Shown: positions 1,902 to 36,062 of the stretch, one piece after another
Layout: every line of letters begins with the position of its first letter
How positions within the stretch are numbered: position 1 is the first letter of the stretch
IMG/VR virus record: IMGVR_UViG_3300033146_002768
Coordinates: 124,001 to 188,000 of that record
DNA length: 64,000 nt
Strand: one strand, 5' to 3'
Translations under genes and position numbers: made by a program
The notes under the pieces: generated by a model
Database searches by the model: none
The model's input: only the letters and a program-made list of their open reading frames with translations
Told to the model about the DNA's origin: nothing

Positions 1902-4028
1902 TTAAATCAAGTCATTAGTTCTAACATACTCATAGTCATTAGATAATCTTTCAATCCCTTTCTTAGTATGATACTTTCTCTTATGAGGTATCACAGCTAA
2001 TTGAATAATTCTATTATTAACAATACAATCTTCAACATCATTATAATTAAATATCAAAGCAGCAGTATCGCCTTTGACAGGTTCAGCAACAACCAGTTCA
2101 TTAGTAGTAAGTCTCAGTCTTGAATCATAGACTTTACCAGACTTATAAACAATCTCAGCATTAACCTTGCCTTGTAATGCTCTAAGAGTTTTAACTCTTC
2201 TATCATAATAATCACTATCATGTCTTCCACCTACATTACCATTACCTTCTTCAGCTTTAAAAGGATTTAATACATGGATCATCTTCTCACTATATTCAAG
2301 TGGGACAATGATATCATATGTATTAAAGTTAAGCAAGTGTAATACTCTATCAATGGTTGTTTTATAACCAGGTTTCAAAGCATCTTTAATCTCTTGTCTA
2401 TCTAATGATGCTTGTTTAATCATATCTTCTCTTACTTTAATCGCTTGTTCCTTTTCCTTTTCTTCATCTATTGCCAATTGTTTTTGTTTCTCTTCATAGT
2501 GCATGATACCTTTCCTCTTTCTCCCCATATATAAAGAAAGATTATCCAAACCTTCAATTTGTTTTAACTCAAACAAATCAGTTATTCTATCTTGATCTAT
2601 TTTAATCAAGACTTGATTCATAGTATCTTCATCAACATAAAAAGAATAGAGAGTCTTCTCAACTTTTTTATAGAATTTCTTTTTTTCTTCTATTGAAAAT
2701 GCTATGTTGTAAGTATTAATTTTCTCATGATAAGCGGGATGTTTAAGTGCATTCATCCCAATCACTCGACAATGCTCTTCCAAAGTAGTTACATTAACAA
2801 AAACAGGCTTGCCTTGGAATGGATAATAAACCAACTTTTGTTCTTTTAGATATTCTCCTTTGGTATTCTCAATGTATGATATACCACATTTAGGAATACT
2901 TATATCCTGGTTAGTCTTATGTTGTTTATACAAATCATAAACATAACTTTTATCAAGATTATTAATAATGTCCTTATATCTTCTATTCAATCCAGGAAAT
3001 ATATTTACTCGATTCTTTTGAATTACATAATGTTTTTCAGCCAAATTTTGCATAAAGTCATAAAGATATTTACCTTCCATGTATGTCATAAGATTAATCA
3101 ATCGTTTAAGAACGATTAGATCAACACACATTATAATAGGAGGTCTATTAGTAAGAATAGATTCAAGAAAAAACATTTGAACCATGAACAACTCTTTATT
3201 TATCTTGGGTATATCTCTATGTCTGAAATATTTTATAGCCTTCTTAGAAGTAAATACTGCATGTTGCATTTCTGGTGAAGATATATCAACAACATTAATA
3301 TATCTAGAAGGTATATTATCCTCATTATGACCAACAACACCATACTTAGTTGACACTATAAGATTACAAGATAACTTAGATACTCTAGCATCATTAGGTA
3401 GTTTAAACGATTGAAATTGAGGAAGTTGAAAAAACTTGCCTTTATTATCACCCTCTTTCTTTCTACAATATAATTCATTATCATTAGGGTTATTGTATAA
3501 AGCTAACTTAACTCCTTTAATAAAGTCAAGTTTATATTTAGCTAAAGGGTTAATAAAACTAACATAATCATCATCACCTTTAATCTCTTTATTATAAAGA
3601 GCATCTATCTTCAAATGAGGATGTTGTTCTAATAGTAATTCAGATACTTCCTGATTGATATTATCAAAACCATTAAACTTTTTAAATGTTAACATTTCTT
3701 TTTGAATAGATTTCATCTCCTCTTTTGATATAGAGCTAGCAAATTTAATTATTATATCTATATCATGCTCCGACATATTTGACTTTTTAGTTAGAGCTAT
3801 CCTCCTTTCTTTATCAGTCATATTATGTGTTAATTTAATAATCTCAGCTAACATATCTTTAACTTCTGGAGTTGCTTTTTGAAATATCTTAAAAGCTTTA
3901 TTATTCATTACTTGTTTCATTCCAGAAACATTTGCTTTACTATAAACTTTACCATCTAGTTCATCAACTATTTTATTACCAGTTAATGGATTCATTAGTT
4001 TGTTTATTTTTATTTCTTTCATAACCAT
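1902..4028 (-). CDS. 708-aa hypothetical protein
   Basis: long ORF, GGAGG RBS, own copy of motif A; no recognised motif. Confidence 0.75.
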   Translation of the reverse strand: MVMKEIKINKLMNPLTGNKIVDELDGKVYSKANVSGMKQVMNNKAFKIFQKATPEVKDMLAEIIKLTHNMTDKERRIALTKKSNMSEHDIDIIIKFASSISKEEMKSIQKEMLTFKKFNGFDNINQEVSELLLEQHPHLKIDALYNKEIKGDDDYVSFINPLAKYKLDFIKGVKLALYNNPNDNELYCRKKEGDNKGKFFQLPQFQSFKLPNDARVSKLSCNLIVSTKYGVVGHNEDNIPSRYINVVDISSPEMQHAVFTSKKAIKYFRHRDIPKINKELFMVQMFFLESILTNRPPIIMCVDLIVLKRLINLMTYMEGKYLYDFMQNLAEKHYVIQKNRVNIFPGLNRRYKDIINNLDKSYVYDLYKQHKTNQDISIPKCGISYIENTKGEYLKEQKLVYYPFQGKPVFVNVTTLEEHCRVIGMNALKHPAYHEKINTYNIAFSIEEKKKFYKKVEKTLYSFYVDEDTMNQVLIKIDQDRITDLFELKQIEGLDNLSLYMGRKRKGIMHYEEKQKQLAIDEEKEKEQAIKVREDMIKQASLDRQEIKDALKPGYKTTIDRVLHLLNFNTYDIIVPLEYSEKMIHVLNPFKAEEGNGNVGGRHDSDYYDRRVKTLRALQGKVNAEIVYKSGKVYDSRLRLTTNELVVAEPVKGDTAALIFNYNDVEDCIVNNRIIQLAVIPHKRKYHTKKGIERLSNDYEYVRTNDLI

Positions 4029-4548: not shown

Positions 4549-4651
4549 AGTATATGTATAGATGAGGGAAGTATATGTATAGATGATGGAAGTATATGTA
4601 TAGATGATGGAAGTATATGTATAGATGATGGAAGTAAGAGGAAGTATATGT
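4549..4651 (+). repeat. 21-bp tandem repeat AGTATATGTATAGATGA(T/G)GGA x4 plus a partial copy
   Basis: copies start at 4549, 4570, 4591 and 4612; no spacers. Confidence 0.9.
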
Positions 4652-6831: not shown

Positions 6832-7089
6832 TTATATACTCATCTTCCTCTGAAGTTTAAACTTTTTCTTTTTAGCAGTAATTAATGCTCTTTGAGCTTT
6901 TGATGAATTACCTTTAGTCTTTATATGATTGACTATTTTATTTATATGATTATCAAGCTTACTTAGTTTATGATTATTATCAGGTGGTAAACGAGAAGCT
7001 TTTATATCTTGTCTAATATTTGCTTGTTTAGAAGATACAGGCGCTCTCTTTTTTTCATTTAAATAATTTAAATATTTATCAACTCTCAT
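6832..7089 (-). CDS. small basic protein with N-terminal YLxxLNE leader
   Basis: MRVDKYLNYLNE then K/R-rich. Confidence 0.6.
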   Translation of the reverse strand: MRVDKYLNYLNEKKRAPVSSKQANIRQDIKASRLPPDNNHKLSKLDNHINKIVNHIKTKGNSSKAQRALITAKKKKFKLQRKMSI

Positions 7090-7349
7090 AAGATATGTCC
7101 TTTTTATTAATACTTTGTAACAATGATCTATAACACCATCTAGGTAAATAGTAAAATACTCCGCTAATAAGCATCCAGATTAATGTAAACCCTAAGCATA
7201 TAAATTCAAGTATAGCCATCATAAATGATAATAGACCAATCATAAAAGCTATACATAAAGGTATTATTATTATTAGTAATGATAGTAATTCACTTAATGT
7301 ATTCTCCTTTTTATATTATGTTACTTTTAATATAAATAGTTTCTATAAT

Positions 7350-7550
7350 CTATCTTTGTACTTTAGTTTGTTTTTGTATCATTGATGCATTCATTTTCTT
7401 TTTCTTCATAGCATCCATTTGTCTTTTTTTCATACGAGCTTTATTGATATCAGCTGCAAGACCTCGAGCAGTATTAATAGCAGATAGTCCTGTTTGTACA
7501 GCAGCTATCCCTATTTCATTTAAGCTTTTAATTATTTGTTTTTTGTCCAT
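7350..7550 (-). CDS. small basic protein with N-terminal LNE leader
   Basis: MDKKQIIKSLNE. Confidence 0.6.
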   Translation of the reverse strand: MDKKQIIKSLNEIGIAAVQTGLSAINTARGLAADINKARMKKRQMDAMKKKKMNASMIQKQTKVQR

Positions 7551-7562
7551 AACATAGTACTC

Positions 7563-7802
7563 CTAAATTTTATTTTTATGCTTAGTTTGTTTTGTAGAAG
7601 CTGCTGCTATTTTTAAATTTCTTTTCTTTTCTCGTCTAGCAGCCATTTTTGCTTTTTGTCTTTTTATATCTTCTGGTCCCATTCCCATAGTTGCTGCTCC
7701 TATAGAACCGATAAATTGAACTACTTTATTATTTCTAAATTTCTCTAATCTTTCGCCTTCCATAATTTTATTTATATCTTTAATAATTTTTAATTTATCC
7801 AT
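7563..7802 (-). CDS. small basic protein with N-terminal IME leader
   Basis: MDKLKIIKDINKIME; motif B upstream at 7832-7846. Confidence 0.6.
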   Translation of the reverse strand: MDKLKIIKDINKIMEGERLEKFRNNKVVQFIGSIGAATMGMGPEDIKRQKAKMAARREKKRNLKIAAASTKQTKHKNKI

Positions 7803-7925
7803 AACATTATCCTTATTTATATTTATTAATATTTATTAATATGTTCCAAAAAAATTTATATATAATTAGATGCATATAACTGCTCGATCGGGCTTAAAAA
7901 ATCGTATCCATTATAAGTATATTTA

Positions 7926-7959
7926 CTATATATATTATTTGGTAATAGTAAAGGATTAT
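7926..7959 (+). promoter_or_regulatory. motif A (N12)
   Basis: upstream of the 7988 ORF, followed by GGAG RBS. Confidence 0.75.
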
Positions 7960-7987
7960 TAATTTAATTTAATTGGAGATATAAATT

Positions 7988-8284
7988 ATGACAGAGAAAT
8001 GTACTAATCAAAATTGTGAATCTTTTTCTTTAGGTTGTGATAGAGAAATTGTTACTACCTGTGAAAATTGTGGAGAGTGTATGAACATTCCATACACTAA
8101 ACCTTGGACAGTACCTAATGATCATCTTGAAAAGAGTAAAGAATGCGATGGTCAGATTTGTCCTTCATGTTATCATATCAATTATTGTGATGAAGAGATT
8201 ATGACTGATGGTCGTAATGATGTTAAATTTAATGAAAGGTCATTTAACGACGAGTGGGAAGAAAACGGAATTCTCGATAAGTAA
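7988..8284 (+). CDS. Cys-rich zinc-binding hypothetical protein
   Basis: CENCGEC and CPSC motifs. Confidence 0.6.
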   Translation: MTEKCTNQNCESFSLGCDREIVTTCENCGECMNIPYTKPWTVPNDHLEKSKECDGQICPSCYHINYCDEEIMTDGRNDVKFNERSFNDEWEENGILDK

Positions 8285-8486
8285 AGGAGGATTAATGGAC
8301 ATTATTTTGATATATCTTTTTGGTTGTGTCATGGCTGCTTATAATGGATGGCAAATGGCTAATTGTCTTAATGAAAAAAGGTACTGGTTGGCAACTATGT
8401 TTGGTACACTTTTAGTTTTGATAGTGTATTTGAATAAAGATATTCCAACAAAATGTGGATGGTGGTAATAATTAAAAGGAGATAAT

Positions 8487-8900
8487 ATGAAAGAAGAAAC
8501 TAAAAAAATAAGTCGCAACATTGCAATTGATGTATTTGTTGCTATGGTAGGCATTTCAATTATAGGGATTTTCTTTGTTGAAGAAAGATCCTGGATTGCA
8601 AAATGGTGGATAAGTGTTGTTGGTATTGGATTTACTGGGTTTGTTATTTGGTTTCTGATTGGAACTTTTCTGAGTTGGAGATCTATCGGAGTTGTTGTGT
8701 TGGGTAAAGGGTATGGAATAGCAGCTTCAATTTTAGGTCTCGGAGGTGGTGTTGGAGGAGCAGCAATTTTTGGTTGTAGTTTAAATATGATTCTTAATCC
8801 AGATCAATATATCTGGAATGTTGGAGGTATTGTTGCAACTATTGTTATTGCTATATTTGTTAGCAATGGAACAAAAGCTGCTATTGATAAACATCAATAG
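8487..8900 (+). CDS. multi-pass membrane protein
   Basis: about four hydrophobic segments. Confidence 0.65.
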   Translation: MKEETKKISRNIAIDVFVAMVGISIIGIFFVEERSWIAKWWISVVGIGFTGFVIWFLIGTFLSWRSIGVVVLGKGYGIAASILGLGGGVGGAAIFGCSLNMILNPDQYIWNVGGIVATIVIAIFVSNGTKAAIDKHQ

Positions 8901-8912
8901 AAAAAAGTTATT

Positions 8913-8941
8913 AAAGAGTGTTTGTAAGGCACTCTTTTTTT
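8913..8941 (+). terminator. intrinsic terminator
   Basis: AAAGAGTG-loop-CACTCTTT + T-run. Confidence 0.7.
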
Positions 8942-9110
8942 GTTTATATTTTCTTTAAACCATTATTTCACATTCAGTTTCATCTATATATTTTTTTATA
9001 AATAAACCTAATCCAAATATAATAGCAGGAATAGATCCTGGTATTAATAATATTATAAGTAATGCTTTCATTAATGTTAATAGTATAATCATTTTATTTT
9101 CCTTTCTAAT

Positions 9111-9482
9111 TTATTTTATAAAATCATGTGGTGGCATTTTATCTAACTTGACATATTTAAGAGTTGATTTTTTCATATCTATTGCTTTCATTAGTCTATG
9201 ATATCCATCTAATAAAATATCTTTAGGACCAACTATAACAGGATATTTAAGTTGAGCATTTCTTATTCTTATTATATGATTCTTTAAATCAAAGTATGTA
9301 TTTAAAGTCCATTCTATTTTTGTATGAAGATCTATTTTATTTATAGATAGAGTTTTTACTGGAAACCCTTTAGTTGCATCAATTAAAGTTTGAACATACC
9401 ATACTTTATTACCTTCTACATAAGTATTTTTTATTTCTAATTTTTCATTTATATATAATTTATTTAAATTTAGTTTATTCAT
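9111..9482 (-). CDS. ParB/Srx N-terminal-like domain protein
   Basis: YPVIV...LLDGYHRL motif. Confidence 0.6.
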   Translation of the reverse strand: MNKLNLNKLYINEKLEIKNTYVEGNKVWYVQTLIDATKGFPVKTLSINKIDLHTKIEWTLNTYFDLKNHIIRIRNAQLKYPVIVGPKDILLDGYHRLMKAIDMKKSTLKYVKLDKMPPHDFIK

Positions 9483-9653
9483 TTCAATAACTCCCTTATT
9501 ATCCTATAACAAACTAGTCCTACAGTATATGTTCTAATTATAATATAATCCACAAAATTAAATATTATACGCATACACTTTACTATCACTGTTAAGCTGA
9601 ATATTATAATCATGACTCCTATGAGATAACTAACTAAGAAGTCAAACATTATA

Positions 9654-9917
9654 TTACCTTGGTCTATTATTCATAGCTCTTCTCATTTGATCACCTTTAA
9701 TTTTTTGATTATCCATAGCTTGTGATCTTTGTTCTGGAGTGCTGCTATTTGATGGTTTATTATTTCTAGAATCTTTAGATGCTGCTTTAATTCCAACATA
9801 TCCAACTAATAATGTTAAAGGAATTAATACACCTGCTGAGCTTTTCCAAACTTTTTTGACTTTATCCCAAATAGCGCCCTCATTTAATTTCATTAAATAA
9901 TTATCTAATATACTCAT
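9654..9917 (-). CDS. small protein with N-terminal YLxxLNE leader
   Basis: MSILDNYLMKLNEG; motif B variant at 9939-9952. Confidence 0.6.
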   Translation of the reverse strand: MSILDNYLMKLNEGAIWDKVKKVWKSSAGVLIPLTLLVGYVGIKAASKDSRNNKPSNSSTPEQRSQAMDNQKIKGDQMRRAMNNRPR

Positions 9918-9989
9918 AATTTTATTCCTTGTTTTTATTTTATATTTTGTTCTATATTTTTGGTTCCATTATAAAATTATGCCAACGGC

Positions 9990-10031
9990 AAAAAAGCAGA
10001 GTGATATATAATATTCACTCTGCTTTTTTTT
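9990..10031. terminator. intrinsic terminator (after the 10035-10487 gene)
   Basis: AAAAAAGCAGAGTGA / TCACTCTGCTTTTTT. Confidence 0.8.
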
Positions 10032-10034
10032 GTA

Positions 10035-10487
10035 TTAAAATTCTGATTCTGGTGCTTGTTCATCACCACTACTAGTATTAGTATCTGCTTGTTCCTCATT
10101 AGGTAATTCTGATTCTGGTGCTTGTTCATCACCACTACTAGTATTAGTATCTGCTTGTTCCTCATTAGGTAATTCAGATATTGTTCTAGCTATACCTCTT
10201 GGCGGAATTGTTCCGCTTAGTTGAGGAGATCTTAATCCAAGAGCTTGTCCTATTTCTGCACTACATTCTTCATCGCAGTCACAAGATTTTTCTTGATCCC
10301 AGTCGACGTCAAATTGTTCTTCCATTTGAGCGAGCATTGCTTTTTCTTTTTCATCACCATTAATATAATGATCAACTAAGAAATCAATAATATTTATATC
10401 AAGAAGTCTAATTCTTTCTTTTAGTCTCATCCATTTTCCTTTTTCATACCAGTCATTTACTAATTCTTTACTTAATTCCATGTTCAC
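10035..10487 (-). CDS. acidic hypothetical protein with a 22-aa C-terminal duplication
   Basis: ELPNEEQADTNTSSGDEQAPES x2. Confidence 0.7.
   Translation of the reverse strand: MNMELSKELVNDWYEKGKWMRLKERIRLLDINIIDFLVDHYINGDEKEKAMLAQMEEQFDVDWDQEKSCDCDEECSAEIGQALGLRSPQLSGTIPPRGIARTISELPNEEQADTNTSSGDEQAPESELPNEEQADTNTSSGDEQAPESEF
10039..10175. repeat. 66-bp exact tandem duplication
   Basis: copies start at 10039 and 10105. Confidence 0.9.
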
Positions 10488-10831
10488 TCCTTTTCACTTT
10501 ATTGTTTTTCTTTTTGAATAACGGTCATTTGTATTTAAATTATCTGACATACCACCGATAATATTTTGATATAATAATGTTAGAATTTTCCATATGATGT
10601 TAGTTAATGCAGCGACAACGGTTAGAAATGCCATAATAATAAATATTAAAATAAGATATATTATTAAAGAATCCATTACTAACCTCCTTGATATTTAATA
10701 AAAGTTACAAAAAAATTACCAAACCAAATACCACATGCTGTTGATATACTAAGCATAAAAATAAAATATATTATACCTCTCCAGTCCATAACTATCCTTT
10801 TTTATTATGTTCTTTTTGTATATTTTATTTT

Positions 10832-11348
10832 CTAAAAGTCATCAAAGTCTTTACTTTTTCTAATAATAGAACCAGTCTTTTGTTTTTGAGGTTCTGATTT
10901 AGTAGAAGTCTTACCACCACTAGAATTTGAACTTATTTTGGTTCCGCCCATTTTAAGACACTTAACAAATTTACCATGTCTAAATGAAGCTTGTCCACCG
11001 TTACCACATTTAGCTCTTACTATATCACCTTTAGCTGACATTTCTTCTCTACGTTTTTTAGACTTAGCTTTAAATCTTTTCATCATTGGACTATCTTCTT
11101 TCTTTTGTTTAGGTGCAACTTTTTTATCTTTATTTCTTAATGCTAATCCAGCAGCAAGACCAGCCCCACCAGCTATTATTTTACCTTTATGATCCCCAAA
11201 CTTTCTTAACAGCATCCCAAGTTTTACCTTCAATGATTTCTTCTTTCTTTTTCTTTTTCTTAACTCCATGTAATCCTTCTATACCAGGAAGTCCAGCAGC
11301 AGAAGAAACCATTTCATTTATTTTATTAATTATTTGAGAACGATCCAT
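10832..11348 (-). pseudogene. frameshifted small basic protein of the INE-leader family
   Basis: RBS-preceded ORF 11348-11187 (MDRSQIINKINE...WDAVKKVWGS*) joins the downstream frame (DHKGKIIAGG...) if one base of the G4 run at 11194-11197 is removed. Confidence 0.6.
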
Positions 11349-11368
11349 AATATATCTCCTAATAAGTA

Positions 11369-11382
11369 TTTATAATATGTTC
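11369..11382 (-). promoter_or_regulatory. motif B (GAACATATTATAAA)
   Basis: exact copy; extends into TATAAATA. Confidence 0.7.
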
Positions 11383-11400
11383 CATTTATCATCAAAGGAA

Positions 11401-11435
11401 CTATATATATTACAATACATAAGAGAAAGGATTAT
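11401..11435 (+). promoter_or_regulatory. motif A (N13)
   Basis: back-to-back with motif B. Confidence 0.7.
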
Positions 11436-11647
11436 TAATTTTAATTTAATGGAGTAAACTATGGATAAGGAGATTTGTGAACAATGTAAAAAGAAGGCAG
11501 ATGATAGAGGTCTTTTTACTTATGCTTTTATAAGCGAAGATCTTATTAAACCGATTGAAACTAAAGAAGTATGTTTTGATTGTCGAAAAAATCTAACAGA
11601 GTTTGATGAAATGAAAAAACAATATCAAAACAATTAAGGAGAATAAT

Positions 11648-11998
11648 ATGAAAGAACAACCATCATCAGCCCCATTTTTCGCTACGTTAGCATTTACATT
11701 TATGGTTGGATTAATTGCTGTATCATGGACTTCAACTAAACAAATAAGTCAATTAAAATATGAATCATTAATTGATAATAAAACAATCAATTCATTAACT
11801 AACGAGACTCATGAATTGAAGTCAAGAAGTCATTATTTTGAATCTCTTTTAAAAGAATCTAAAGGATCAAATGATACAATGATTGCTGATTTGATGAATT
11901 ATAAATCTCAAATTGAAAAGATGAAAGCTGAAATTGAAGAATATGAATCTGTTCAATTACAAAGTAATGAAGTTTTAAAGAAATTAATGTTGAATTAA
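11648..11998 (+). CDS. membrane-anchored coiled-coil protein
   Basis: N-terminal TM segment then heptad-rich region. Confidence 0.6.
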   Translation: MKEQPSSAPFFATLAFTFMVGLIAVSWTSTKQISQLKYESLIDNKTINSLTNETHELKSRSHYFESLLKESKGSNDTMIADLMNYKSQIEKMKAEIEEYESVQLQSNEVLKKLMLN

Positions 11999-12028
11999 AA
12001 TCTAAATAATTCAATAATTAAAGAGCAG

Positions 12029-12472
12029 TCAGAGTGCTCTTTTTTGTATCTTTTTAATAATTTTAGTAGTAGAAATCCCTTTAACAATCGGAATTCTTAT
12101 AGTTTTATCTTCTATTTTTTTAGGAGACCAGTCTGACCCTTTAACTAAAAAATCGGGTTTTATTTTTTCTATTAATTTTTTTGGTGTTTTTTCATTAAAA
12201 ATTACAACATGATCAACATATTTTAATGATGATAAAATTTCAGCTCTATGATCTTGATTAATAATAGGTCGTTTTTGACCTTTTATTTCTTTAATAGACG
12301 AGTCTGAGTTTAATCCAACAATTAAAAAATCGCCTAATTTTGATGCTTCTCGTAAACATTTTATATGACCTACATGTAAAATATCAAAACAACCATTCGT
12401 AAAAACTACTCTTCTATGAAATTGTCGATAAACTTCCATGACATATTCTATTTCATCTTGAGTATTTATCAT
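12029..12472 (-). CDS. rfaE2: D-glycero-beta-D-manno-heptose 1-phosphate adenylyltransferase-like cytidylyltransferase
   Basis: VFTNGCFDILHVGH, LIVGLNSDSS, KGQKRPI, KPDFLVKGSDW. Confidence 0.85.
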   Translation of the reverse strand: MINTQDEIEYVMEVYRQFHRRVVFTNGCFDILHVGHIKCLREASKLGDFLIVGLNSDSSIKEIKGQKRPIINQDHRAEILSSLKYVDHVVIFNEKTPKKLIEKIKPDFLVKGSDWSPKKIEDKTIRIPIVKGISTTKIIKKIQKRAL

Positions 12473-13164
12473 TTCATTCCTTTATAATCACCTAAAATTC
12501 CATTAAAATATTTTTTAATTTTAGGAACTATTGGGTATCCGAAGTGAGCTGACCAATGTTCAATATTAATATAAATAATATATCCTGCCCACCAAACTAT
12601 ACCGATATTAAAAATTCTTTCACCTACATCAATCCAATAATTCATAAATTTCTCCTTTTATAATTTGTTCTTTATATACAAAATAGTTTCTTATAATGCC
12701 TCAACGAGCTTAAATAGCGTTTAATGAGGTTTAATAAAGTTTCGTGATAAGGAGGTTACCTTTCAATAAACATTAAAAATACAAAAAAATAATGTTATAT
12801 TTAATATCTTATATTATTTTTTTCGTTGTTTTATTAATATGTCTTGATGGTTAACTCCTTCTCTACCATTTAAAAAAACCTTCTTAACTGATCTTGTTAT
12901 TACATTTCCTTCATTACGAATTTGTTGAACGATTATTAGATTGTCTTCTTCCGCTAATGAAATTATTCTTGCTAATTTTTCAGCGGATTGATTTTTTACA
13001 GTAAGTGTTTTAATTTTTCCATCAATAGTACTAGTATCAATAACATGAATATAAATCATATTAGCTCCTTTTCAATTCAGCAAAAATAATCATATAACAC
13101 AACACAATTGTTAAATAATATATATAGTTTTTTAATCTAAAATGGATAGAATTTTTTGGTCTAA

Positions 13165-13178
13165 TTTATAATATGTTC
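13165..13178 (-). promoter_or_regulatory. motif B
   Basis: exact copy. Confidence 0.65.
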
Positions 13179-13200
13179 GGATACATTATGGTTTAAATTA

Positions 13201-13234
13201 CTATATATATTATTGTGTAATAGTAAAGGATTAT
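13201..13234 (+). promoter_or_regulatory. motif A (N12)
   Basis: followed by GGAGG RBS and ATG. Confidence 0.75.
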
Positions 13235-13452
13235 CACTTTAATTTAATGGAGGTTATTATGGAAGATATGATAGTGAAGTTTATTCAAGATTATCAAATG
13301 TTGATAGTTGGTGTAATTGCCATTGTGGCTGTAGGATTAGGATTCTATCTTTATAAAAAATCTGGCTTGTATAGCAGAAAAGTCCCCCAAGACTTATATA
13401 AAGATATTAGGTAATCTAAATGTTTTTTATAATTTAAAAAAGGAGAATAGTT

Positions 13453-14316
13453 ATGATAGATACAAGTCAAATGAGACTTGACCCTACAGATCCTGATTCT
13501 TATAGAGCTTTATATGCAGCAGTAGATAAGAATTTTGCTGAGGCAATAACAACCGTTAATGAAACTGCTATAGAACATTATAACAGATTTGTTAAGTTCG
13601 AACAATCAGATGATGTAAAGCTTCATATTATTCATCCTCGACATGTTGATGATAGTCAACCAAAATTTAAAAAACGGAAAAATGTTTTTTATCAAGGAAA
13701 GTTGATTATTGCTCTTGCTGTAGATGATCATATGTTAGAAGAAATGGAACGACAAAACAATGAACCTTTAGAAGAATGGTTGGAAGTTATCAGAATGGTT
13801 ATTGAGGATAATATGTCATTTATTAAAAGAAAACGAGTTGCTGAATCTGATAAAGAACATCGGGTCAGAGTTAAACGGTTTCTAGGGCTTGAGTATGAAG
13901 TTATGGAAATGATTAATAATAAATCTCGACAAAATGCCCTTGATGAAGGAATTGAATATTATAATTCAGAAGCTTCTAAGGAAGCTGCTAAGGAAGGTGT
14001 AAGACAACATTTCAAAATAGAGGAAGAAAATAAAGAAAAAGCTTCCATACAATTAGATGTGGATAAACAAACTTATTCATATTTTATATGGGGAATAATA
14101 AGTGTTGTTGGTTTCTCATGTCTTATTTTGAATAGTTTAGGGTGGTTTCCCGTTTTTATACCATTGACGATATTTTCAACTTGTGTTATTCTTTGTTCAA
14201 TTATTGCTTTTTCAAAATCAGAAAAATCACATTTTGAGAAAATAAATAATAACAAAGCATATGAAGTTGGATTTAAAAATACCACAATGAAAATTGTTAA
14301 AGGAATTTTTAATTAA
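13453..14316 (+). CDS. hypothetical protein with two C-terminal TM helices
   Basis: hydrophobic hairpin near the C-terminus. Confidence 0.65.
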   Translation: MIDTSQMRLDPTDPDSYRALYAAVDKNFAEAITTVNETAIEHYNRFVKFEQSDDVKLHIIHPRHVDDSQPKFKKRKNVFYQGKLIIALAVDDHMLEEMERQNNEPLEEWLEVIRMVIEDNMSFIKRKRVAESDKEHRVRVKRFLGLEYEVMEMINNKSRQNALDEGIEYYNSEASKEAAKEGVRQHFKIEEENKEKASIQLDVDKQTYSYFIWGIISVVGFSCLILNSLGWFPVFIPLTIFSTCVILCSIIAFSKSEKSHFEKINNNKAYEVGFKNTTMKIVKGIFN

Positions 14317-14487
14317 GGAGATTGATATGAAACATGTTATAGTATTGGGTATGATTGGGATGTCTGCATTCTTTTTCTTTGGTGATGCTGAAGCGATAAC
14401 AAGTATGATGGCAACAGCATGTTGGACTGGGGGTTTAGCTGTAATGGTTATTGGATTGTTTAAAGCAATTCTTAACTAACAAGAATT

Positions 14488-14528
14488 AAAAAGGGGGTTG
14501 CAATATTATTATGCAACCCCTTTTTTTT
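14488..14528. terminator. bidirectional terminator ending the long minus-strand block
   Basis: AAAAAGGGGGTTGCA / TGCAACCCC + T-run at a convergent junction. Confidence 0.85.
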
Positions 14529-14535
14529 GTATAAA

Positions 14536-14778
14536 TTATCTTCTAGATGCTGTTCTGGTTCTTCCAGCATATTTTTTATGTACTTTTTTTCTATAATCTT
14601 TACATCTATCACAATATTTTTTCATCATTTTATATAATGGATCTCCACGCTTTCTAGCCATAGAAGTAGATAGTTGACCTTGAGCTCTTTTAATTTTTGT
14701 CTTTCGACTAATAGTAGCACGGGATCTTTGTTTTCGAGCTTCTTGTAACATATTTAAGTAATCATTTATATAACTCAT
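14536..14778 (-). CDS. highly basic small protein with YLxxLQE leader
   Basis: MSYINDYLNMLQE, R/K-rich. Confidence 0.65.
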   Translation of the reverse strand: MSYINDYLNMLQEARKQRSRATISRKTKIKRAQGQLSTSMARKRGDPLYKMMKKYCDRCKDYRKKVHKKYAGRTRTASRR

Positions 14779-15185
14779 TTTTATATTCCTTATACGTATT
14801 TATACATATTACAATTTAATGTTTTGTTTTGAAATTTTGCTGATCTATAACATAACGGAGTAAATTTAGTTAACCCAATAACTCCGCTGAATTTACAATT
14901 ATCGCAACTTATTTTAACTGATAACTCTCCATCTATATGAGATATTATTTGTATGTTATCAGATATAAATTCATCATCACCAAATATTAAAAGAGATGCA
15001 GATGAAGTAGATATAATAATATTAGCCTCTAAATGTTCAACATAACCATATTCAATAGTACCAAAAGATTCTGAGTTAATATAAACATTTGCTGTCAAAC
15101 TGGTTATTTCATGTATTTTTTCTAATGTAGAATTTATAGAAATAGTTGCATGATTATAACTAGTTAAACTTATATCAGCCATTTA

Positions 15186-15872
15186 TTAAACCTCTTTAAT
15201 TTTAAAGTCTTTTAGTTTATCATCATATTCTACATATGTATAATTATGAATCATGTCGCCACAATTTATATATGTACAATTGTCATGAGATGATATCTTA
15301 GGAAAATGAGTATGTCCCATTACAAGATAATTACATTTATGATTGTATGCATCAATAGCTTCTATTTCAACATCTTTAAGTAATTGAGCATAATAATCTT
15401 TATTTCTTTTACTAGATAAAGATTTACCAAATAACTTTCTAAAGAATGCTTTTAAATTAATACCAAAAATTCTTTCAGTAATCCAGTGAGGTACAAATAA
15501 TATTTTACCTAACCAAGAATATTTATTTACTAAATTATCAAATTGACACCCATGTATAATAAACACATCATCTAATAATAACTCACTGACAACTTTTGAA
15601 TATAAGAATGTTAATCTTAAATCTACGGCATCAGGATCATGATTACCTTCTATATAATAAACATCTTTTTGAGTAGATACATCATTTATAACATTTACTA
15701 TATCAGTATTTTTTCTAATTATATCATAAAAACAATCTTCCCAAATATCAAAAATATCACCATTCAAAACAATTCTATCATATTCTGAGCATTTAAGTAA
15801 TTTAATAACTTCATCTTTTTTATTAAATAAAGGACTACCTAAATGCAAATCTGAAAGAATTAATGTTTTCAT
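15186..15872 (-). CDS. calcineurin-like metallophosphoesterase (LpxH-like)
   Basis: SDLHLG, NGDIFD, GNHD, IIHG, MGHTH, YINCGD. Confidence 0.8.
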   Translation of the reverse strand: MKTLILSDLHLGSPLFNKKDEVIKLLKCSEYDRIVLNGDIFDIWEDCFYDIIRKNTDIVNVINDVSTQKDVYYIEGNHDPDAVDLRLTFLYSKVVSELLLDDVFIIHGCQFDNLVNKYSWLGKILFVPHWITERIFGINLKAFFRKLFGKSLSSKRNKDYYAQLLKDVEIEAIDAYNHKCNYLVMGHTHFPKISSHDNCTYINCGDMIHNYTYVEYDDKLKDFKIKEV

Positions 15873-16146
15873 TAGAACTCCTTAAATGGTTTATTTTTTT
15901 TACTTAAATGAATATGCCAATGAGTATCTGAATCGGAAATTGTATCGTCGATAAAAAGTCCTTTATGCTTTTCTTTAATAATTCTTAAAACTTCTTTTTT
16001 TTCATCAGTTGATATTTTATTTCTATGTTCTTTTAAAATAATCATTGGGACAAAATGTTTATTACATTTAACTCCAAAAAATCTTTCTGTTTCCCATAGT
16101 TTCCTTTTGACTTTACACATCTTACATTTTATTCGTGCCATTTCAC

Positions 16147-16491
16147 CTATAACCTTGATAGTTTAGTTTTCAGTTTATTGATCTCTTTAGTTAATTTAAC
16201 AACTTCTTTATTAATCTTACTTATACATTTTGGTATATTTGTTGACCATTTTTGACAAGTAGTTTTGAATTTTTTAACTTCGATTATTGTTTTTCGTAAT
16301 GCATTAATCTTATATTTTATGAAACATTTTTTTCTATCAACACCTAATTTTCCTAAACAGTGTTTAGCAATTTTTTTATGTTCCATATATTTTTTATAAA
16401 TTTTACTTGCTAAAATAATAACAGGAAGAACGACAAATTCATTTAACTCCTCAGTATTTTCTTGTAAGTAATCTAAATATCTATTTATCAT
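16147..16491 (-). CDS. basic protein with YLxxLQE leader
   Basis: MINRYLDYLQE. Confidence 0.6.
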   Translation of the reverse strand: MINRYLDYLQENTEELNEFVVLPVIILASKIYKKYMEHKKIAKHCLGKLGVDRKKCFIKYKINALRKTIIEVKKFKTTCQKWSTNIPKCISKINKEVVKLTKEINKLKTKLSRL

Positions 16492-18222: not shown

Positions 18223-18792
18223 TTATTTTCCTTTTTGATAATTAATTGTAAACAAAGATTTATCTAAAGTTAAATAATCATCAGGCATTATATAGTTTTC
18301 TTTTTTTCTATTCATTTTAGGTTTATCAAAAAAGTAATCAATCACCTCTGTGCATGAAAATCTAGTTGAGTCACTAAAATCAAAACTAAAATCATATTCA
18401 ACGCCTTTAACATATAAATCTCTAGCCTTCTTTATTGCAGCCTTTGATATTTGTTCTTCATTACAATGGATGATTGCCACGTCATCACAGCGACAAAAGG
18501 TTAAGATATCTTGTTTATCTATTCCATCTCCTAACATATGAATAACTTTATTATTTCCCATATAGATTGCGGCATGCGTATAGTAACCAGGAATCATTAG
18601 ACCACTTAGATAATGATTATATCGTCTTAATAAAATATCTCCGGGTTGAATAATATTTATTATATCTCTTACATCTTCGCCTTTCATTTCATAAGCAGTA
18701 TGCCCAAACATAATAAATGAAGGGTATTTAAATACTTGAATATTTCCGAACCATTTAATAGCTGCTTTTTTAATTTTATAAAATACACTCAT
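18223..18792 (-). CDS. permuted papain-like amidase (YiiX/YebB-like NlpC/P60)
   Basis: QPGDILL, YTHAAIY, YDFSF, FSCTEVI (His before Cys). Confidence 0.8.
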   Translation of the reverse strand: MSVFYKIKKAAIKWFGNIQVFKYPSFIMFGHTAYEMKGEDVRDIINIIQPGDILLRRYNHYLSGLMIPGYYTHAAIYMGNNKVIHMLGDGIDKQDILTFCRCDDVAIIHCNEEQISKAAIKKARDLYVKGVEYDFSFDFSDSTRFSCTEVIDYFFDKPKMNRKKENYIMPDDYLTLDKSLFTINYQKGK

Positions 18793-24210: not shown

Positions 24211-25086
24211 TTATACAACATTTTTTAAAGCTTTTAAAGTAGTCTCATCTTTATCCAAAACATGTTTCCAATATGATCTAATTGAATCTATATCATCAGA
24301 TGCAGAAACTTTTCTATTGTAAGGAATCCCAATACTAAATGTATATATTTGTCCATTTCTAATTCTTGAATTAAACCATTTAACATTTATAGTAGACCCA
24401 GTTCTAGTTACAATTTTATTAGTTACTTCTCTTAAAAACTTTTGATATTTTTCAGTATCATTAACTACATTTTTATGAACTATATCTAGTTTAGTAATAT
24501 CTTTTTCTTTTAAGAATTGTTTCCAATTTAATCCAATCATATCTTCTTCTGAATTATATCCAAGATCTTTTCCTAATTTATAACTACATGATTTTACTTT
24601 CATATCATCATCAAGTATTAACATATAAATATTAGTATAATCAAAAAGTTCTTTTAAACTCAACTGAAGTTTTGTTTGTTCTATTTTATGTCGTTTATAA
24701 GCTTTGGAAACTTTTAATAAAACTTTAATTCTGTTTACTAATTTATCTGTATTGAAAGGTTTTAGAATAAAATCATAAGTATATTCATATTTTTCAAAAC
24801 ATTCATATTCATAGTTTTTTCCAGACATAAATAAATAAGGAATATTAAATTCATTTTTAAATAATTCATCGGCTATTTCATTTCCTTTTAATTCTGAATT
24901 TAATTCTATATCAATAATAAATAAATTAGCTTCTGTAATTGCTGAATGCATCATCATATCATTACAACGATTAAAACTATAAATATCTACATTGGGAATT
25001 TTTTTTTCTATCATCTCTTTCAACATAGTAGTTATTTCTTTATTGTCGTCTAATATAAATATTACTTGTTTTATAACATCACTCAT
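24211..25086 (-). CDS. response-regulator receiver + PAS domain protein
   Basis: ILDD, IIDIEL, FMSG, LKPF receiver residues; LGYNSEEDMIG PAS motif. Confidence 0.8.
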   Translation of the reverse strand: MSDVIKQVIFILDDNKEITTMLKEMIEKKIPNVDIYSFNRCNDMMMHSAITEANLFIIDIELNSELKGNEIADELFKNEFNIPYLFMSGKNYEYECFEKYEYTYDFILKPFNTDKLVNRIKVLLKVSKAYKRHKIEQTKLQLSLKELFDYTNIYMLILDDDMKVKSCSYKLGKDLGYNSEEDMIGLNWKQFLKEKDITKLDIVHKNVVNDTEKYQKFLREVTNKIVTRTGSTINVKWFNSRIRNGQIYTFSIGIPYNRKVSASDDIDSIRSYWKHVLDKDETTLKALKNVV

Positions 25087-29375: not shown

Positions 29376-30376
29376 TCATAAATTTTTGTTAGTGTAATAG
29401 GATCAGCATTAGTAATATCCTTAGAGCTAACATCTTCATAACTATTACAGACTTTACAATGTTCATGATCAGATAAATTTAAATAAGCATTAGAACTATA
29501 TACTTCATCTAATTTCTGAATATTTAAATTTCCTATCTTTGTTTTAAAATATATATCACCAGAGCATCCACACCCTATCATAATACCTGTTGATGAAATA
29601 AAATTTTTAGTAAGAAAGTATTGACACATCTTAGGTCTTTCTTTAACATTAGCAGTTAATTTAAAATTTTCAGACTCTAATACTTCATTACTAATTAATG
29701 ATCTACGACTACAAAAATCATCTCTTGGAAATAACATAGAATTTGTCATTCGACTAATCTGAAATAATAACTTATAAGTTTCAGATGTTATTAGTAATTT
29801 ATGATGTATTTTTGTTTTTGTATAAATAGGAATGTTTAAGTTTATATTTATATTATTATCAATTAAATATTTTAAATTATTTTTGAAATTTAAATAAAAG
29901 GTTTTTGTACTTCTGGCAAACCTTTCAAATTCAGAAAAATGTAAACCATAACAACTAATGCCTAACCAACTTATTTTTTTTAATGACAAGAGTTTATCTA
30001 AATATTTATTATTATCAATTGTTAAATTTGTATAAAAATGATATCCATCAACATTGGGATGATTTTCTAATATATCTAATTTCTCAATAAATGTTTTATC
30101 TAAAAAAACTTCGCCATTCATTGGAGTTAATGAAAAATAAGTAAATCCAAAATCACAACATTGATTCAATATATCTTTAAACATATCAATTGACATACTC
30201 ATTGACTTCTCTGTTTTCTTTTCACCTCTTTCTTTTTGATTACAATGGATACAATTTAAATTACATATATTGATAGATTCGATTGCAATATAGTTATAAA
30301 ACATATTTCCATTTTTAGTAAATGATTTATATCTAATATTCTTTTCTATATTAGGAAATTTTGAGAATGTAATCAT
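29354..30376 (-). CDS. radical SAM protein (twitch/SPASM-like)
   Basis: CNLNCIHC, NGEVF, C-terminal C...CGC...IGNL...CKVC. Confidence 0.85.
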   Translation of the reverse strand: MITFSKFPNIEKNIRYKSFTKNGNMFYNYIAIESINICNLNCIHCNQKERGEKKTEKSMSMSIDMFKDILNQCCDFGFTYFSLTPMNGEVFLDKTFIEKLDILENHPNVDGYHFYTNLTIDNNKYLDKLLSLKKISWLGISCYGLHFSEFERFARSTKTFYLNFKNNLKYLIDNNININLNIPIYTKTKIHHKLLITSETYKLLFQISRMTNSMLFPRDDFCSRRSLISNEVLESENFKLTANVKERPKMCQYFLTKNFISSTGIMIGCGCSGDIYFKTKIGNLNIQKLDEVYSSNAYLNLSDHEHCKVCNSYEDVSSKDITNADPITLTKIYEWRQENL

Positions 30377-35957: not shown

Positions 35958-36062
35958 TTATTTATAAATAAATGGATCTTTTTTTTTAGATTTTCTTTTT
36001 TTAATTATATATTTAATTTCTAAAATAAAGTCTATCCATAATTCTATTATTTTTTTAATCAT
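35958..36062 (-). CDS. 34-aa carbamoyltransferase-associated peptide (not in ORF track)
   Basis: MIKKIIELWIDFILEIKYIIKKRKSKKKDPFIYK; start overlaps the upstream gene end. Confidence 0.6.
   Translation of the reverse strand: MIKKIIELWIDFILEIKYIIKKRKSKKKDPFIYK

What the first reader, a model, noticed from the sequence alone, without database searches (positions are those of the whole stretch)
6832..16491. Dispersed small basic proteins sharing a capsid-targeting-like leader
Seen: otherwise dissimilar minus-strand proteins start MRVDKYLNYLNE (7089), MDKKQIIKSLNE (7550), MDKLKIIKDINKIME (7802), MSILDNYLMKLNE (9917), MDRSQIINKINE (11348), MSYINDYLNMLQE (14778) and MINRYLDYLQE (16491). The ParB-like protein (9482) starts MNKLNLNKLYINE. 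Several lie right behind motif B. Established: T4 internal proteins carry a ~10-aa capsid targeting sequence removed by the gp21 protease after L/I-x-E, and IPI* inhibits a restriction enzyme. Inference: this is a set of packaged, injected proteins that may include anti-defence factors.
Basis: partly seen in the sequence, partly recalled or inferred. Interest (0 to 1): 0.7.

Follow-up and report, generated by a model that had tools for sequence, protein, structure and literature searches.

The report
Capsid-targeting leaders on basic phage proteins
A group of small, very basic proteins in an uncultured jumbo phage share a short N-terminal tag that most likely directs them into the phage head and is then cut off by the head protease, as in phage T4; the tag could therefore flag packaged proteins from sequence alone.

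Summary
The shared leader is real and not chance. The window lies in a 207-kb fragment of an uncultured jumbo phage that has a gp23-like capsid protein and a gp21-like (S77) prohead protease.

- **Enrichment:** the motif [DNE]-x-Y-L-x-x-[LI]-x-E is about 40 times more frequent at N-termini than inside proteins (p=1e-6 here; 8e-17 with two relatives).
- **Members:** 9654 comes just below. The three 'MDKxQII..NE' proteins are a weaker variant. The ParB-like protein is not a member.
- **Portability:** the leader sits on unrelated protein bodies, including an acidic scaffold-like protein.
- **Cleavage junction:** in the 80-aa cargo family, 124 distant homologues with N-terminal extensions of 9-770 aa keep a [LI]-x-E|[AVSG] junction at a fixed distance from the basic core, and 24 others start about there.
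- **Virion link:** the phiR1-37 homologue g168 is annotated as a virion protein. The phiR1-37 capsid protein matures after L-Q-E, at a site conserved here.
- **Regulation:** three leader genes share a promoter-like motif with the capsid gene.

Best reading: T4-style capsid-targeting propeptides on internal head proteins. Packaging and cleavage are inferred; injection and anti-defence are untested.

The parts
6832..7089 (-). 85-aa protein. Y-type leader MRVDKYLNYLNE (codons at 7054-7089), then a 73-aa body with net charge +18 and no Glu. No homologue found in the relatives' genomes searched locally.
   Evidence: (matrix score 22.8, above all internal positions).
7350..7550 (-). 66-aa protein with the I-type leader variant MDKKQIIKSLNE and a basic tail. 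Second gene of a two-gene unit with 7563-7802.
   Evidence: (paralogue of 7563-7802 and of the 5' part of 11348).
7563..7802 (-). 79-aa protein with the I-type leader variant MDKLKIIKDINKIME and a basic tail. Orphan in 5.8 billion proteins.
7833..7848 (-). Promoter-like motif B (GGAACATATTAATAAA), 45 nt upstream of the 7802 start.
   Evidence: 19 copies in the genome against 0.55 in shuffles, 18 of them within 150 nt upstream of a gene start, including the capsid gene.
9654..9917 (-). 87-aa protein with Y-type leader MSILDNYLMKLNE followed by a G-x-x-W junction, a hydrophobic Gly/Ala-rich segment and a basic tail. Paralogue of the gene directly after the prohead protease.
   Evidence: (E 5e-5 to the head-module paralogue).
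9940..9954 (-). Promoter-like motif B (AGAACAAAATATAAA), 36 nt upstream of the 9917 start.
10832..11348 (-). One gene split in this assembly into 11187-11348 and 10832-11269. It has the I-type leader MDRSQIINKINE, a second I-I-E|G-x-x-W junction and a long basic body. It is intact (212 aa) in relative G001, where the leader is Y-type.
11370..11384 (-). Promoter-like motif B (GGAACATATTATAAA), 35 nt upstream of the 11348 start.
14536..14778 (-). 80-aa protein with Y-type leader MSYINDYLNMLQE, then a conserved, very basic (39% K+R, no Glu) helical core. It belongs to a widespread family whose phiR1-37 member g168 is annotated as a virion protein.
16147..16491 (-). 114-aa protein with Y-type leader MINRYLDYLQE, a second L-N-E site, a short hydrophobic helix and a basic C-terminal domain. 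That domain is shared with proteins of 116-299 aa in relatives; several of the closest carry the leader.

Best explanation
The leader is a capsid-targeting propeptide of the T4 kind. Its core, Y-L-x-x-[LI]-x-E, forms a short N-terminal helix. The proteins carrying it are made together with the head genes. The helix brings them into the assembling prohead core. The S77 (gp21-like) prohead protease then cuts after the Glu of [LI]-x-E. This releases small, extremely basic mature proteins that stay with the packaged DNA as internal head proteins. They most likely neutralise or organise the DNA, and leave the head with it at infection.

Shown here:
- the motif is N-terminus-specific and portable;
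- the protease and a gp23-like capsid protein are present;
- an [LI]-x-E junction is conserved in front of one cargo family, whose phiR1-37 homologue is annotated as a virion protein.

Inferred: targeting, cleavage of these particular proteins, retention in the head, and ejection.
For: 1. **Specificity.** The motif is 37-46 times enriched at N-termini. A matrix trained only on relatives separates five N-termini of this genome from all 59,288 internal positions. The same procedure finds 7, 5 and 2 such N-termini in relatives G001, G003 and G005.

2. **Portability.**
- The leader sits on at least four unrelated bodies in this genome.
- In relatives it sits on DUF5661 (E 6e-15), and on weak P-loop-like and crotonase/ClpP-like matches.
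- It also sits on a 302-aa protein with net charge -67 and 16 h-x-E sites, next to the head module. There Y7, L11 and K12 are invariant, and L10 and E13 nearly so, in 15 orthologues.
- A 106-aa basic leader protein is encoded directly after the protease gene.

3. **Protease and its specificity.**
- Peptidase_S77 matches at E 1.5e-12 and the head-maturation-protease PHROG at 5e-27.
- The GenBank record of phiR1-37, the nearest cultured phage by capsid protein, gives the mature capsid N-terminus as Ser87, that is after M-L-Q-E.
- The matching N-L-L-E|N-S-M is conserved in the clade's capsid proteins (one has L-M-E).

4. **Conserved junction in the 80-aa family.**
- E13 is nearly invariant in 38 sequences.
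- Among 124 cluster representatives with N-terminal extensions of 9-770 aa, Glu sits exactly 7 residues before the core in 60% of them. Most neighbouring positions have 1-15%, the highest 29%.
- At that Glu, P3 is L/I/V/M/F in 84%, against 33% for other Glu in the same extensions. P1' is A/V/S/G in 70%.
- 24 representatives have no extension and start within a few residues of the core.

5. **Virion link.** The family profile hits phiR1-37 g168 (E 3e-9; hhalign probability 94%). g168 is annotated 'virion structural protein', and its basic domain follows V-L-T-E|A.

6. **Same register as the T4 signal.** In MKTYQEFIAE, residues 4 and 7 matter for targeting and residues 8 and 10 for processing (PMC9026906). 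Here Y is at -6, Y/L/H/F often at -3, L/I at -2 and E at 0.

7. **Structure.** An AlphaFold2 model (pLDDT 90) puts the leader in its own helix (residues 2-14), followed by a non-helical linker and then the helical core.

8. **Co-regulation.** Motif B lies upstream of 7802, 9917 and 11348, the capsid gene, the acidic protein, and genes resembling tail or virion proteins. It lies upstream of 9 of 25 leader genes in three genomes, against about 5% of all genes.

9. **Composition.** The mature parts are 20-39% Lys+Arg. Three of them have no Glu at all.
Against: - There is no experimental datum for this phage. It is uncultured and the contig is about 66% complete.
- The protease-substrate complex prediction gave no answer.
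- The small proteins have no detectable similarity to the T4 internal proteins or to any solved structure.
- Several cargo proteins carry a hydrophobic segment after the leader, which the T4 internal proteins as I recall them do not have. This could mean a membrane role.
- Some relatives have D, K or R in place of the final Glu, so cleavage may not be universal.
- Only part of the leader genes have motif B directly upstream.
- The h-x-E depletion in the mature parts is not significant on its own.
Confidence: 0.65

Rival explanations
1. The leader proteins are prohead core or scaffold accessories, like T4 gp67 and gp68. They use the leader to co-assemble with the acidic scaffold-like protein, and are then degraded or expelled. 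They are not retained with the DNA and not injected.
For: The same leader is on the acidic scaffold-like protein, and a leader gene lies between the protease and capsid genes. A feature-based atlas search lists a T4 gp68 'prohead core protein' cluster among distant neighbours, which is a lead only.
Against: Except for 16147-16491, the mature parts have no h-x-E site (about 2 expected by chance) and very little Glu, so they should survive the protease intact. The acidic protein has 16 such sites. The extreme positive charge fits DNA binding. The phiR1-37 homologue is annotated as a protein of finished virions.
Confidence: 0.15
2. The shared N-terminus is an amphipathic helix with a role unrelated to the capsid. 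These would be small membrane-active or regulatory proteins, for example in lysis, superinfection exclusion or DNA-entry channels.
For: Hydrophobic or Gly/Ala-rich segments follow the leader in 9654, 11348/10832 and 16147 and in several relatives. The neighbourhood is full of small membrane-protein ORFs.
Against: - The leader is also on a soluble, highly acidic head-module protein and on the hydrophilic 80-aa family.
- It ends in the protease motif, with a junction conserved over extensions of 9-770 aa.
- Three leader genes share a promoter motif with the capsid gene.
- The family has a homologue annotated as a virion protein.
Confidence: 0.1
3. The conservation is at the nucleotide level: a translation-initiation or regulatory RNA element that happens to overlap the first codons.
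For: The genome is AT-rich and several of these genes share upstream motifs.
Against: Among orthologues the amino-acid pattern is kept while the residues, and so the codons, change, and leader length varies from 9 to 19 aa. The pattern persists in G003 at 37% GC against 29% here. In long-extension homologues the junction lies far from the start codon.
Confidence: 0.03
4. It is chance similarity in a Lys/Asn/Ile/Leu/Glu-rich proteome.
For: The loose pattern [LI]-x-E is no commoner at N-termini than inside proteins (ratio 1.1). The exact heptapeptide YLNYLNE occurs mostly internally in unrelated viral proteins elsewhere in IMG/VR.
Against: Fisher p=1.4e-6 in this genome and 7.6e-17 over three genomes. 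A matrix trained on relatives separates the N-termini completely from internal positions.
Confidence: 0.02

Closest known systems
Phage T4 capsid targeting sequence (CTS) of the internal proteins IPI, IPII, IPIII and Alt, removed by the gp21 prohead protease
   Same: - A 10-19-aa N-terminal propeptide ending in [LI]-x-E.
- The propeptide is shared by otherwise unrelated proteins, and similar N-termini occur on scaffold and vertex proteins.
- A gp21-family protease and a gp23-family capsid protein are present.
- The cargo is small and basic.
- The cargo genes are dispersed in a variable region.
- The key positions are in the same register: Y at -6, I/L at -2, E at 0 (PMC3012670).
   Different: - The consensus differs: [DNE]-x-Y-L-x-x-L-x-E against MKTYQEFIAE.
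- The T4 signal scores only 3-8 bits on this clade's matrix.
- The cargo bodies show no homology to the T4 internal proteins.
- The cargo is far more basic (net +10 to +26 in 54-103 aa, against +2 to +9 in T4), and several members have a hydrophobic segment.
- The host phage is a jumbo phage whose capsid protein is only about 25% identical to T4-like ones.
- Nothing has been tested experimentally.
Yersinia phage phiR1-37 virion protein g168 and capsid maturation at Ser87
   Same: The g168 C-terminal basic domain is homologous to the 80-aa protein 14536-14778 and is preceded by L-T-E|A. The capsid protein matures after L-Q-E at a site conserved in this clade.
   Different: g168 has a 79-aa acidic extension with five h-x-E sites instead of a 13-aa Y-L-x-x-L-x-E leader. 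No Y-type leader was seen in the phiR1-37 head-region proteins inspected. Cleavage of g168 itself could not be checked because the 2012 proteome paper is not held.
Propeptides of head and ejection proteins in phiKZ-like giant phages (phiKZ, 201phi2-1, SPN3US)
   Same: A diverged gp21-like protease cuts after Glu in many head proteins, including abundant DNA-associated internal proteins (PMC9026906; PMC10052503).
   Different: The motif there is S/A-x-E or A-x-E, not L/I-x-E. Most propeptides are long (111-254 aa), and no short shared targeting motif has been defined. Their role is stated to be unresolved.
Adenovirus core protein precursors (pVII, pX/mu)
   Same: Very basic DNA-condensing proteins made with propeptides that the viral protease removes inside the capsid (my own knowledge). 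An Adeno_VII cluster appeared among distant feature neighbours, which is a lead only.
   Different: The virus lineage and protease family are unrelated, and there is no sequence relationship. This is an analogy only.

Membership tests
T4-type CTS / internal-protein system | A gp21-family (Peptidase_S77) prohead protease is encoded by the phage | tested here: met
   PF03420 at E 1.5e-12, over the cut-off, at genome 197435-198091. phrog_207 head maturation protease at E 5e-27.
T4-type CTS / internal-protein system | A gp23-family major capsid protein that matures after [LI]-x-E | tested here: met
   PF07068 at E 2e-34. The phiR1-37 homologue is annotated with a mature N-terminus at Ser87, after M-L-Q-E. 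The aligned N-L-L-E|N-S is conserved across the clade. Cleavage in this phage itself is inferred.
T4-type CTS / internal-protein system | A short (10-19 aa) N-terminal leader ending in [LI]-x-E | tested here: met
   Leaders of 11-15 aa ending L-N-E, L-Q-E, I-N-E or I-M-E.
T4-type CTS / internal-protein system | The same leader on otherwise unrelated proteins (a portable signal) | tested here: met
   At least four unrelated bodies in this genome, and more in relatives, including proteins with enzyme-like family matches.
T4-type CTS / internal-protein system | Leader sequence similar to the T4 CTS (MKTYQEFIAE), with the targeting and processing residues in the same register | tested here: inconclusive
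   Y at -6, I/L at -2 and E at 0 coincide. The T4 IPII and IPIII leaders score 8.0 and 3.0 bits on the clade matrix (0.02-0.1% tail), while IPI, gp22, gp24 and Alt score below zero.
T4-type CTS / internal-protein system | Cargo homologous to T4 IPI, IPII, IPIII or Alt | tested here: not met
   No PHROG or Pfam match to internal proteins. The 80-aa family profile finds nothing in the T4 genome.
T4-type CTS / internal-protein system | Proteins physically present in virions with the leader removed | not testable with these tools
   Indirect evidence only: the homologue g168 is annotated as a phiR1-37 virion protein, and the junction is conserved.
T4-type CTS / internal-protein system | Expression together with the head genes | tested here: inconclusive
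   Promoter-like motif B is shared with the capsid gene and with genes resembling tail or virion proteins. No expression data exist, and only one distantly matching sequencing run was found.
T4-type CTS / internal-protein system | Ejection into the host and anti-restriction or anti-defence activity | not testable with these tools
   No similarity to any named family. PADLOC and anti-defence libraries were not informative for proteins of this size, and PADLOC was not run.
   No Pfam family at E<=0.01, only phrog_17560 of unknown function. A D-G-Y-H-R motif is visible in the sequence but was not tested further.

The most novel reading that the evidence does not exclude
The Y-L-x-x-L-x-E leader is a clade-wide, freely transferable 'load into the capsid' tag. 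On this reading, this jumbo-phage lineage uses it to package a fast-turning-over set of cargo: orphan basic proteins, proteins with a hydrophobic helix and, in relatives, proteins with enzyme-like family matches. Some of that cargo would be injected counter-defence or host-takeover factors. The injected proteome of uncultured phages could then be read from sequence, and the tag could be used to load foreign proteins.
Probability: 0.3. Interest if true: 0.75.

Novelty: new member of a known kind. Interest (0 to 1): 0.55.

Why it matters
Which proteins a phage carries inside its head and delivers with its DNA is hard to predict, yet such proteins include first-strike counter-defence factors such as T4 IPI*. 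For giant phages the role of head-protein propeptides is stated to be unresolved (PMC10052503).

Here a short motif that can be scored, together with the protease cut site, marks candidate packaged proteins in an uncultured jumbo-phage lineage. It also links them to a widespread family of basic proteins that has one homologue annotated as a virion protein.

If this is confirmed, three things follow. The T4 targeting principle would extend to a lineage with only about 25% capsid-protein identity. There would be a sequence rule for finding injected cargo in metagenomes. And there would be a candidate tag for loading proteins into large capsids.

Tried and rejected
- **T4 late promoter.** TATAAATA lies upstream of only 13 of 258 genes and occurs 104 times in this AT-rich genome, so it is not specific. 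I replaced it with the longer motif B.
- **Complex prediction.** The prohead protease with the 80-aa protein gave 'no answer' (score 0.00). This is evidence neither for nor against.
- **Fold searches.** The 80-aa model found nothing significant in PDB. In BFVD it found only uncharacterised myovirus proteins, plus a 159-aa entry the same length as phiR1-37 g168.
- **Family searches.** Pfam and PHROGs gave only weak hits for the small proteins. The best was phrog_26909 'virion structural protein' at E 0.0055 for 14536-14778.
- **Large-database searches.** The 106-aa head-module paralogue found only itself and one 58%-identical fragment. 7563-7802 found only itself. Both are fast-evolving or orphan.
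- **tblastn.** The 80-aa protein against cultured phages found nothing. The profile search was needed.
- **Scaffold homology.** The acidic protein compared with T4 gp22 and phiR1-37 g129 gave no significant similarity, so 'scaffold-like' rests on composition and position only.
- **Heptapeptide scan of IMG/VR.** YLNYLNE (AT-rich codons) gave 32 hits, mostly internal in unrelated proteins. Only two were true N-terminal hits on basic proteins. This is a useful control but no gain in breadth.
- **Lost-Glu compensation.** Testing whether a lost Glu is compensated by a nearby h-x-E was too noisy because of spurious ORFs.
- **Read-level check of the frameshift near 11203.** Only one marine-sediment run holds 7% of the words, so this was not done.
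- **phiR1-37 proteome paper.** Not held in the library.
- **Pfam PF26830 (T4 gp68).** Not in the local library.

Full report
**Context**

The window is bases 124,001-188,000 of a single 207,111-bp IMG/VR viral contig with 29% G+C. CheckV estimates it to be 66% complete.

The genome encodes a gp23-family major capsid protein (PF07068, E 2e-34, genome 194789-196240, minus strand). It also encodes a gp21-family prohead protease (PF03420, E 1.5e-12; phrog_207, E 5e-27; genome 197435-198091) and a portal protein.

The capsid protein is only 23-26% identical to those of cultured phages. The best match is the jumbo Yersinia phage phiR1-37. Twenty-seven related IMG/VR loci were found. They include two complete genomes of 277 and 312 kb with terminal repeats. 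This is therefore an uncultured jumbo-phage lineage in the T4/phiR1-37 capsid superfamily.

All eight quoted N-termini are present. Good ribosome-binding sites lie in front of all the ATGs except that of 16491, where the site is weak.

The loose pattern [LI]-x-E is not enriched at N-termini (ratio 1.1). The fuller pattern is.
- Y[LIM]xx[LIM][NQHRKS]E begins within the first 13 residues six times in this genome, against three times in 61,352 internal positions (p=1.4e-6).
- With relatives G001 and G003 the counts are 17 against 6 (p=7.6e-17).

I trained a position matrix only on leaders from relatives and applied it to this genome. It places five N-termini above the maximum of all 59,288 internal positions, and a sixth at the 5e-5 tail.
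- The other two lie outside the window, in and beside the head module. One is a 106-aa basic protein encoded directly after the protease. The other is a 302-aa protein of net charge -67.

The three proteins beginning MDK/MDR..QII..[LI]NE (7350, 7563, 11348) score weakly. They are tied to the main type because the G001 orthologue of the 11348 gene carries a Y-type leader.

The ParB-like protein does not fit the matrix and has no ParB Pfam match. I exclude it.

ORF 11187-11348 is the front part of a gene that continues in 10832-11269 after a one-base indel in a G-run. The G001 orthologue is a single 212-aa ORF.

'Otherwise dissimilar' is half right. There are three small paralogue groups and two proteins that share only the leader with the others.

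**The leader is a portable module**

In relatives the same N-terminus is attached to:
- a DUF5661 protein (E 6e-15);
- proteins with weak P-loop-like and crotonase/ClpP-like matches;
- several unrelated basic proteins.

In 15 orthologues of the acidic protein, the most conserved stretch of the N-terminus is the leader itself. Y7, L11 and K12 are invariant, and L10 and E13 nearly so. That protein has 16 h-x-E sites and an extreme negative charge, as expected of a scaffold that is degraded. It shows no detectable homology to T4 gp22 or phiR1-37 g129.

The protease's own N-terminus keeps two h-x-E sites. The capsid protein starts M-K-E-L-L-x-E.

**Evidence for cleavage after [LI]-x-E**

The GenBank record of phiR1-37 states that its capsid protein matures at Ser87. 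The preceding residues are M-L-Q-E. The aligned sequence N-L-L-E|N-S-M is conserved in the capsid proteins of this clade; one has L-M-E.

The strongest evidence comes from the 80-aa protein 14536-14778.
- Its family is conserved, and in relatives the gene lies inside the head module. This genome has a second copy next to the portal gene.
- A profile search of 1.84 billion cluster representatives found 206 members. I analysed 148 of them, and 124 have an N-terminal extension of 9 to about 770 residues.
- In 60% of those 124, a Glu lies exactly seven residues before the conserved basic core. Most neighbouring positions have 1-15% Glu, the highest 29%.
- At the last Glu before the core, P3 is Leu in 60% and hydrophobic in 84%. 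For other Glu residues in the same extensions the hydrophobic figure is 33%. P1' is A, V, S or G in 70%.
- Twenty-four members have no extension and begin within a few residues of the core.

This is what a conserved maturation site in front of a mature domain should look like. It matches the T4 gp21 motif L/I-x-E (PMC9026906).

**Link to virions**

The family profile finds one gene in phiR1-37, g168 (E 3e-9; hhalign probability 94%). g168 is annotated 'virion structural protein / phage structural protein'. Its basic domain follows a 79-aa acidic extension that ends V-L-T-E|A.

**Comparison with the T4 signal**

In T4 IPIII (MKTYQEFIAE), residues 4 and 7 matter for targeting and residues 8 and 10 for processing. 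Asp at position 10 blocks cutting but not targeting (PMC9026906).

Counted from the Glu, these are positions -6, -3, -2 and 0. In this clade:
- position -6 is Tyr in 38 of 42 leaders (the training pattern allowed only Y or F there);
- position -3 is often Y, L, H or F;
- position -2 is L or I in 41 of 42.

The T4 IPII and IPIII leaders score 8.0 and 3.0 bits on the clade matrix. This is a resemblance in logic, not proof of common descent. Some clade members have D, K or R at position 0, often with another h-x-E a few residues on. That is compatible with targeting and cutting being separable.

**Structure and composition**

An AlphaFold2 model of the 80-aa protein (pLDDT 90) has the leader as a separate helix (residues 2-14). 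A non-helical linker (15-24) follows, and then a three-helix basic core.

The mature parts of the window's proteins are 20-39% Lys+Arg with net charge +10 to +26. Three contain no Glu at all. Several have a Gly/Ala-rich or hydrophobic segment directly after the leader. I cannot explain this feature. It keeps a membrane-related role open.

**Regulation**

It has 19 copies against 0.55 in shuffles, and 18 of them lie 26-144 nt upstream of a gene start.

It precedes:
- 7802, 9917 and 11348;
- the capsid gene, the acidic protein and a small head-module gene;
- genes matching tail or virion-protein PHROGs.

Over three genomes it precedes 9 of 25 leader genes, against about 5% of all genes. None of the Y-type leaders lies in the roughly 95-kb plus-strand half of the contig. 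That half looks replicative, but I did not annotate it. A different motif (motif A) precedes the interleaved plus-strand genes. These points argue against the refuting condition 'equally frequent in early genes'. No expression data exist.

**Verdict**

The interpretation of a T4-style capsid-targeting propeptide removed by the prohead protease is well supported by comparative evidence. It remains an inference for this phage.

The most economical role for the mature proteins is DNA-associated internal head proteins that leave the head with the genome. Anti-defence activity is possible, since three of the window's proteins found no homologue in the searches run, in line with the fast turnover of the T-even internal-protein loci (PMC3012670). 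It is wholly untested.

The kind of system is known from T4. What is new is its presence, with its own consensus and cargo, in a distant uncultured jumbo-phage lineage, together with the conserved junction in a widespread basic-protein family.

Noticed in passing
window 25500-51300, minus strand: A long operon of biosynthetic enzymes rather than structural genes. It includes two Nol-like carbamoyltransferases (30376-31920, 36055-37512; E about 1e-105) and at least three radical-SAM proteins (42920-44032, 46222-47370, 48820-49935). G+C is only 21-26%. It may be a glycan or DNA-hypermodification pathway.
   Followed up: no
window 24211-25086, minus strand: A phage-encoded protein with a response-regulator receiver domain (E 2e-9) and a weak PAS-like region.
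   Followed up: no
window 10832-11348, minus strand, near 11203: A gene split by a one-base indel in a GGGG run. It is intact in relative G001 (212 aa). It could be an assembly error, a pseudogene or a frameshift site. No reads were available to decide.
   Followed up: partly
window 4094, 4908, 7926, 11401, 13201: A second promoter-like motif ('motif A'): CTATATATATTA, then 9-12 nt, then AAGGATTAT. Four of the five copies lie 46-65 nt upstream of gene starts: three small plus-strand genes (Cys-rich and membrane proteins) and 1902-4028. All five are in this 10-kb region, interleaved with the motif-B genes.
   Followed up: partly
window 4549-4636 and 10039-10179: A 21-bp tandem repeat with 4.2 copies in an intergenic region, and a 66-bp tandem duplication that repeats 22 codons at the C-terminus of ORF 10035-10487.
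   Followed up: no
genome 192969-193751, plus strand (L073:4969-5751), outside the window: A 260-aa protein with motif B 35 nt upstream and a leader-like N-terminus (H-Y-L-Q-Y-L-E, then S-L-N-E). Its multi-pass membrane C-terminal part has E-E-x-x-x-R and H-x-x-x-N motifs that resemble CPBP-type intramembrane proteases. It has no PHROG match.
   Followed up: partly
genome 193811-194638, minus strand (L073:5811-6638): An HNH/homing-endonuclease-like gene directly downstream of the capsid gene, also preceded by motif B.
   Followed up: no
protein family of window 14536-14778 (P0070, P0076, P0083 and 21 others): Twenty-four cluster representatives of the basic-core family lack any N-terminal extension and start within a few residues of the core. 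Some lineages therefore seem to make the 'mature' form directly.
   Followed up: partly
It lies in one gene string with the leader gene 9654-9917 and two tiny membrane-protein ORFs.
   Followed up: partly
window 12029-12472, 15186-15872, 18223-18792, 55887-57722: - 12029-12472: cytidylyltransferase-like protein, judged by eye from the sequence.
- 15186-15872: calcineurin-like metallophosphatase.
- 18223-18792: Peptidase_C92/NlpC-P60-like protein.
- 55887-57722: NAD-dependent DNA ligase.
   Followed up: no
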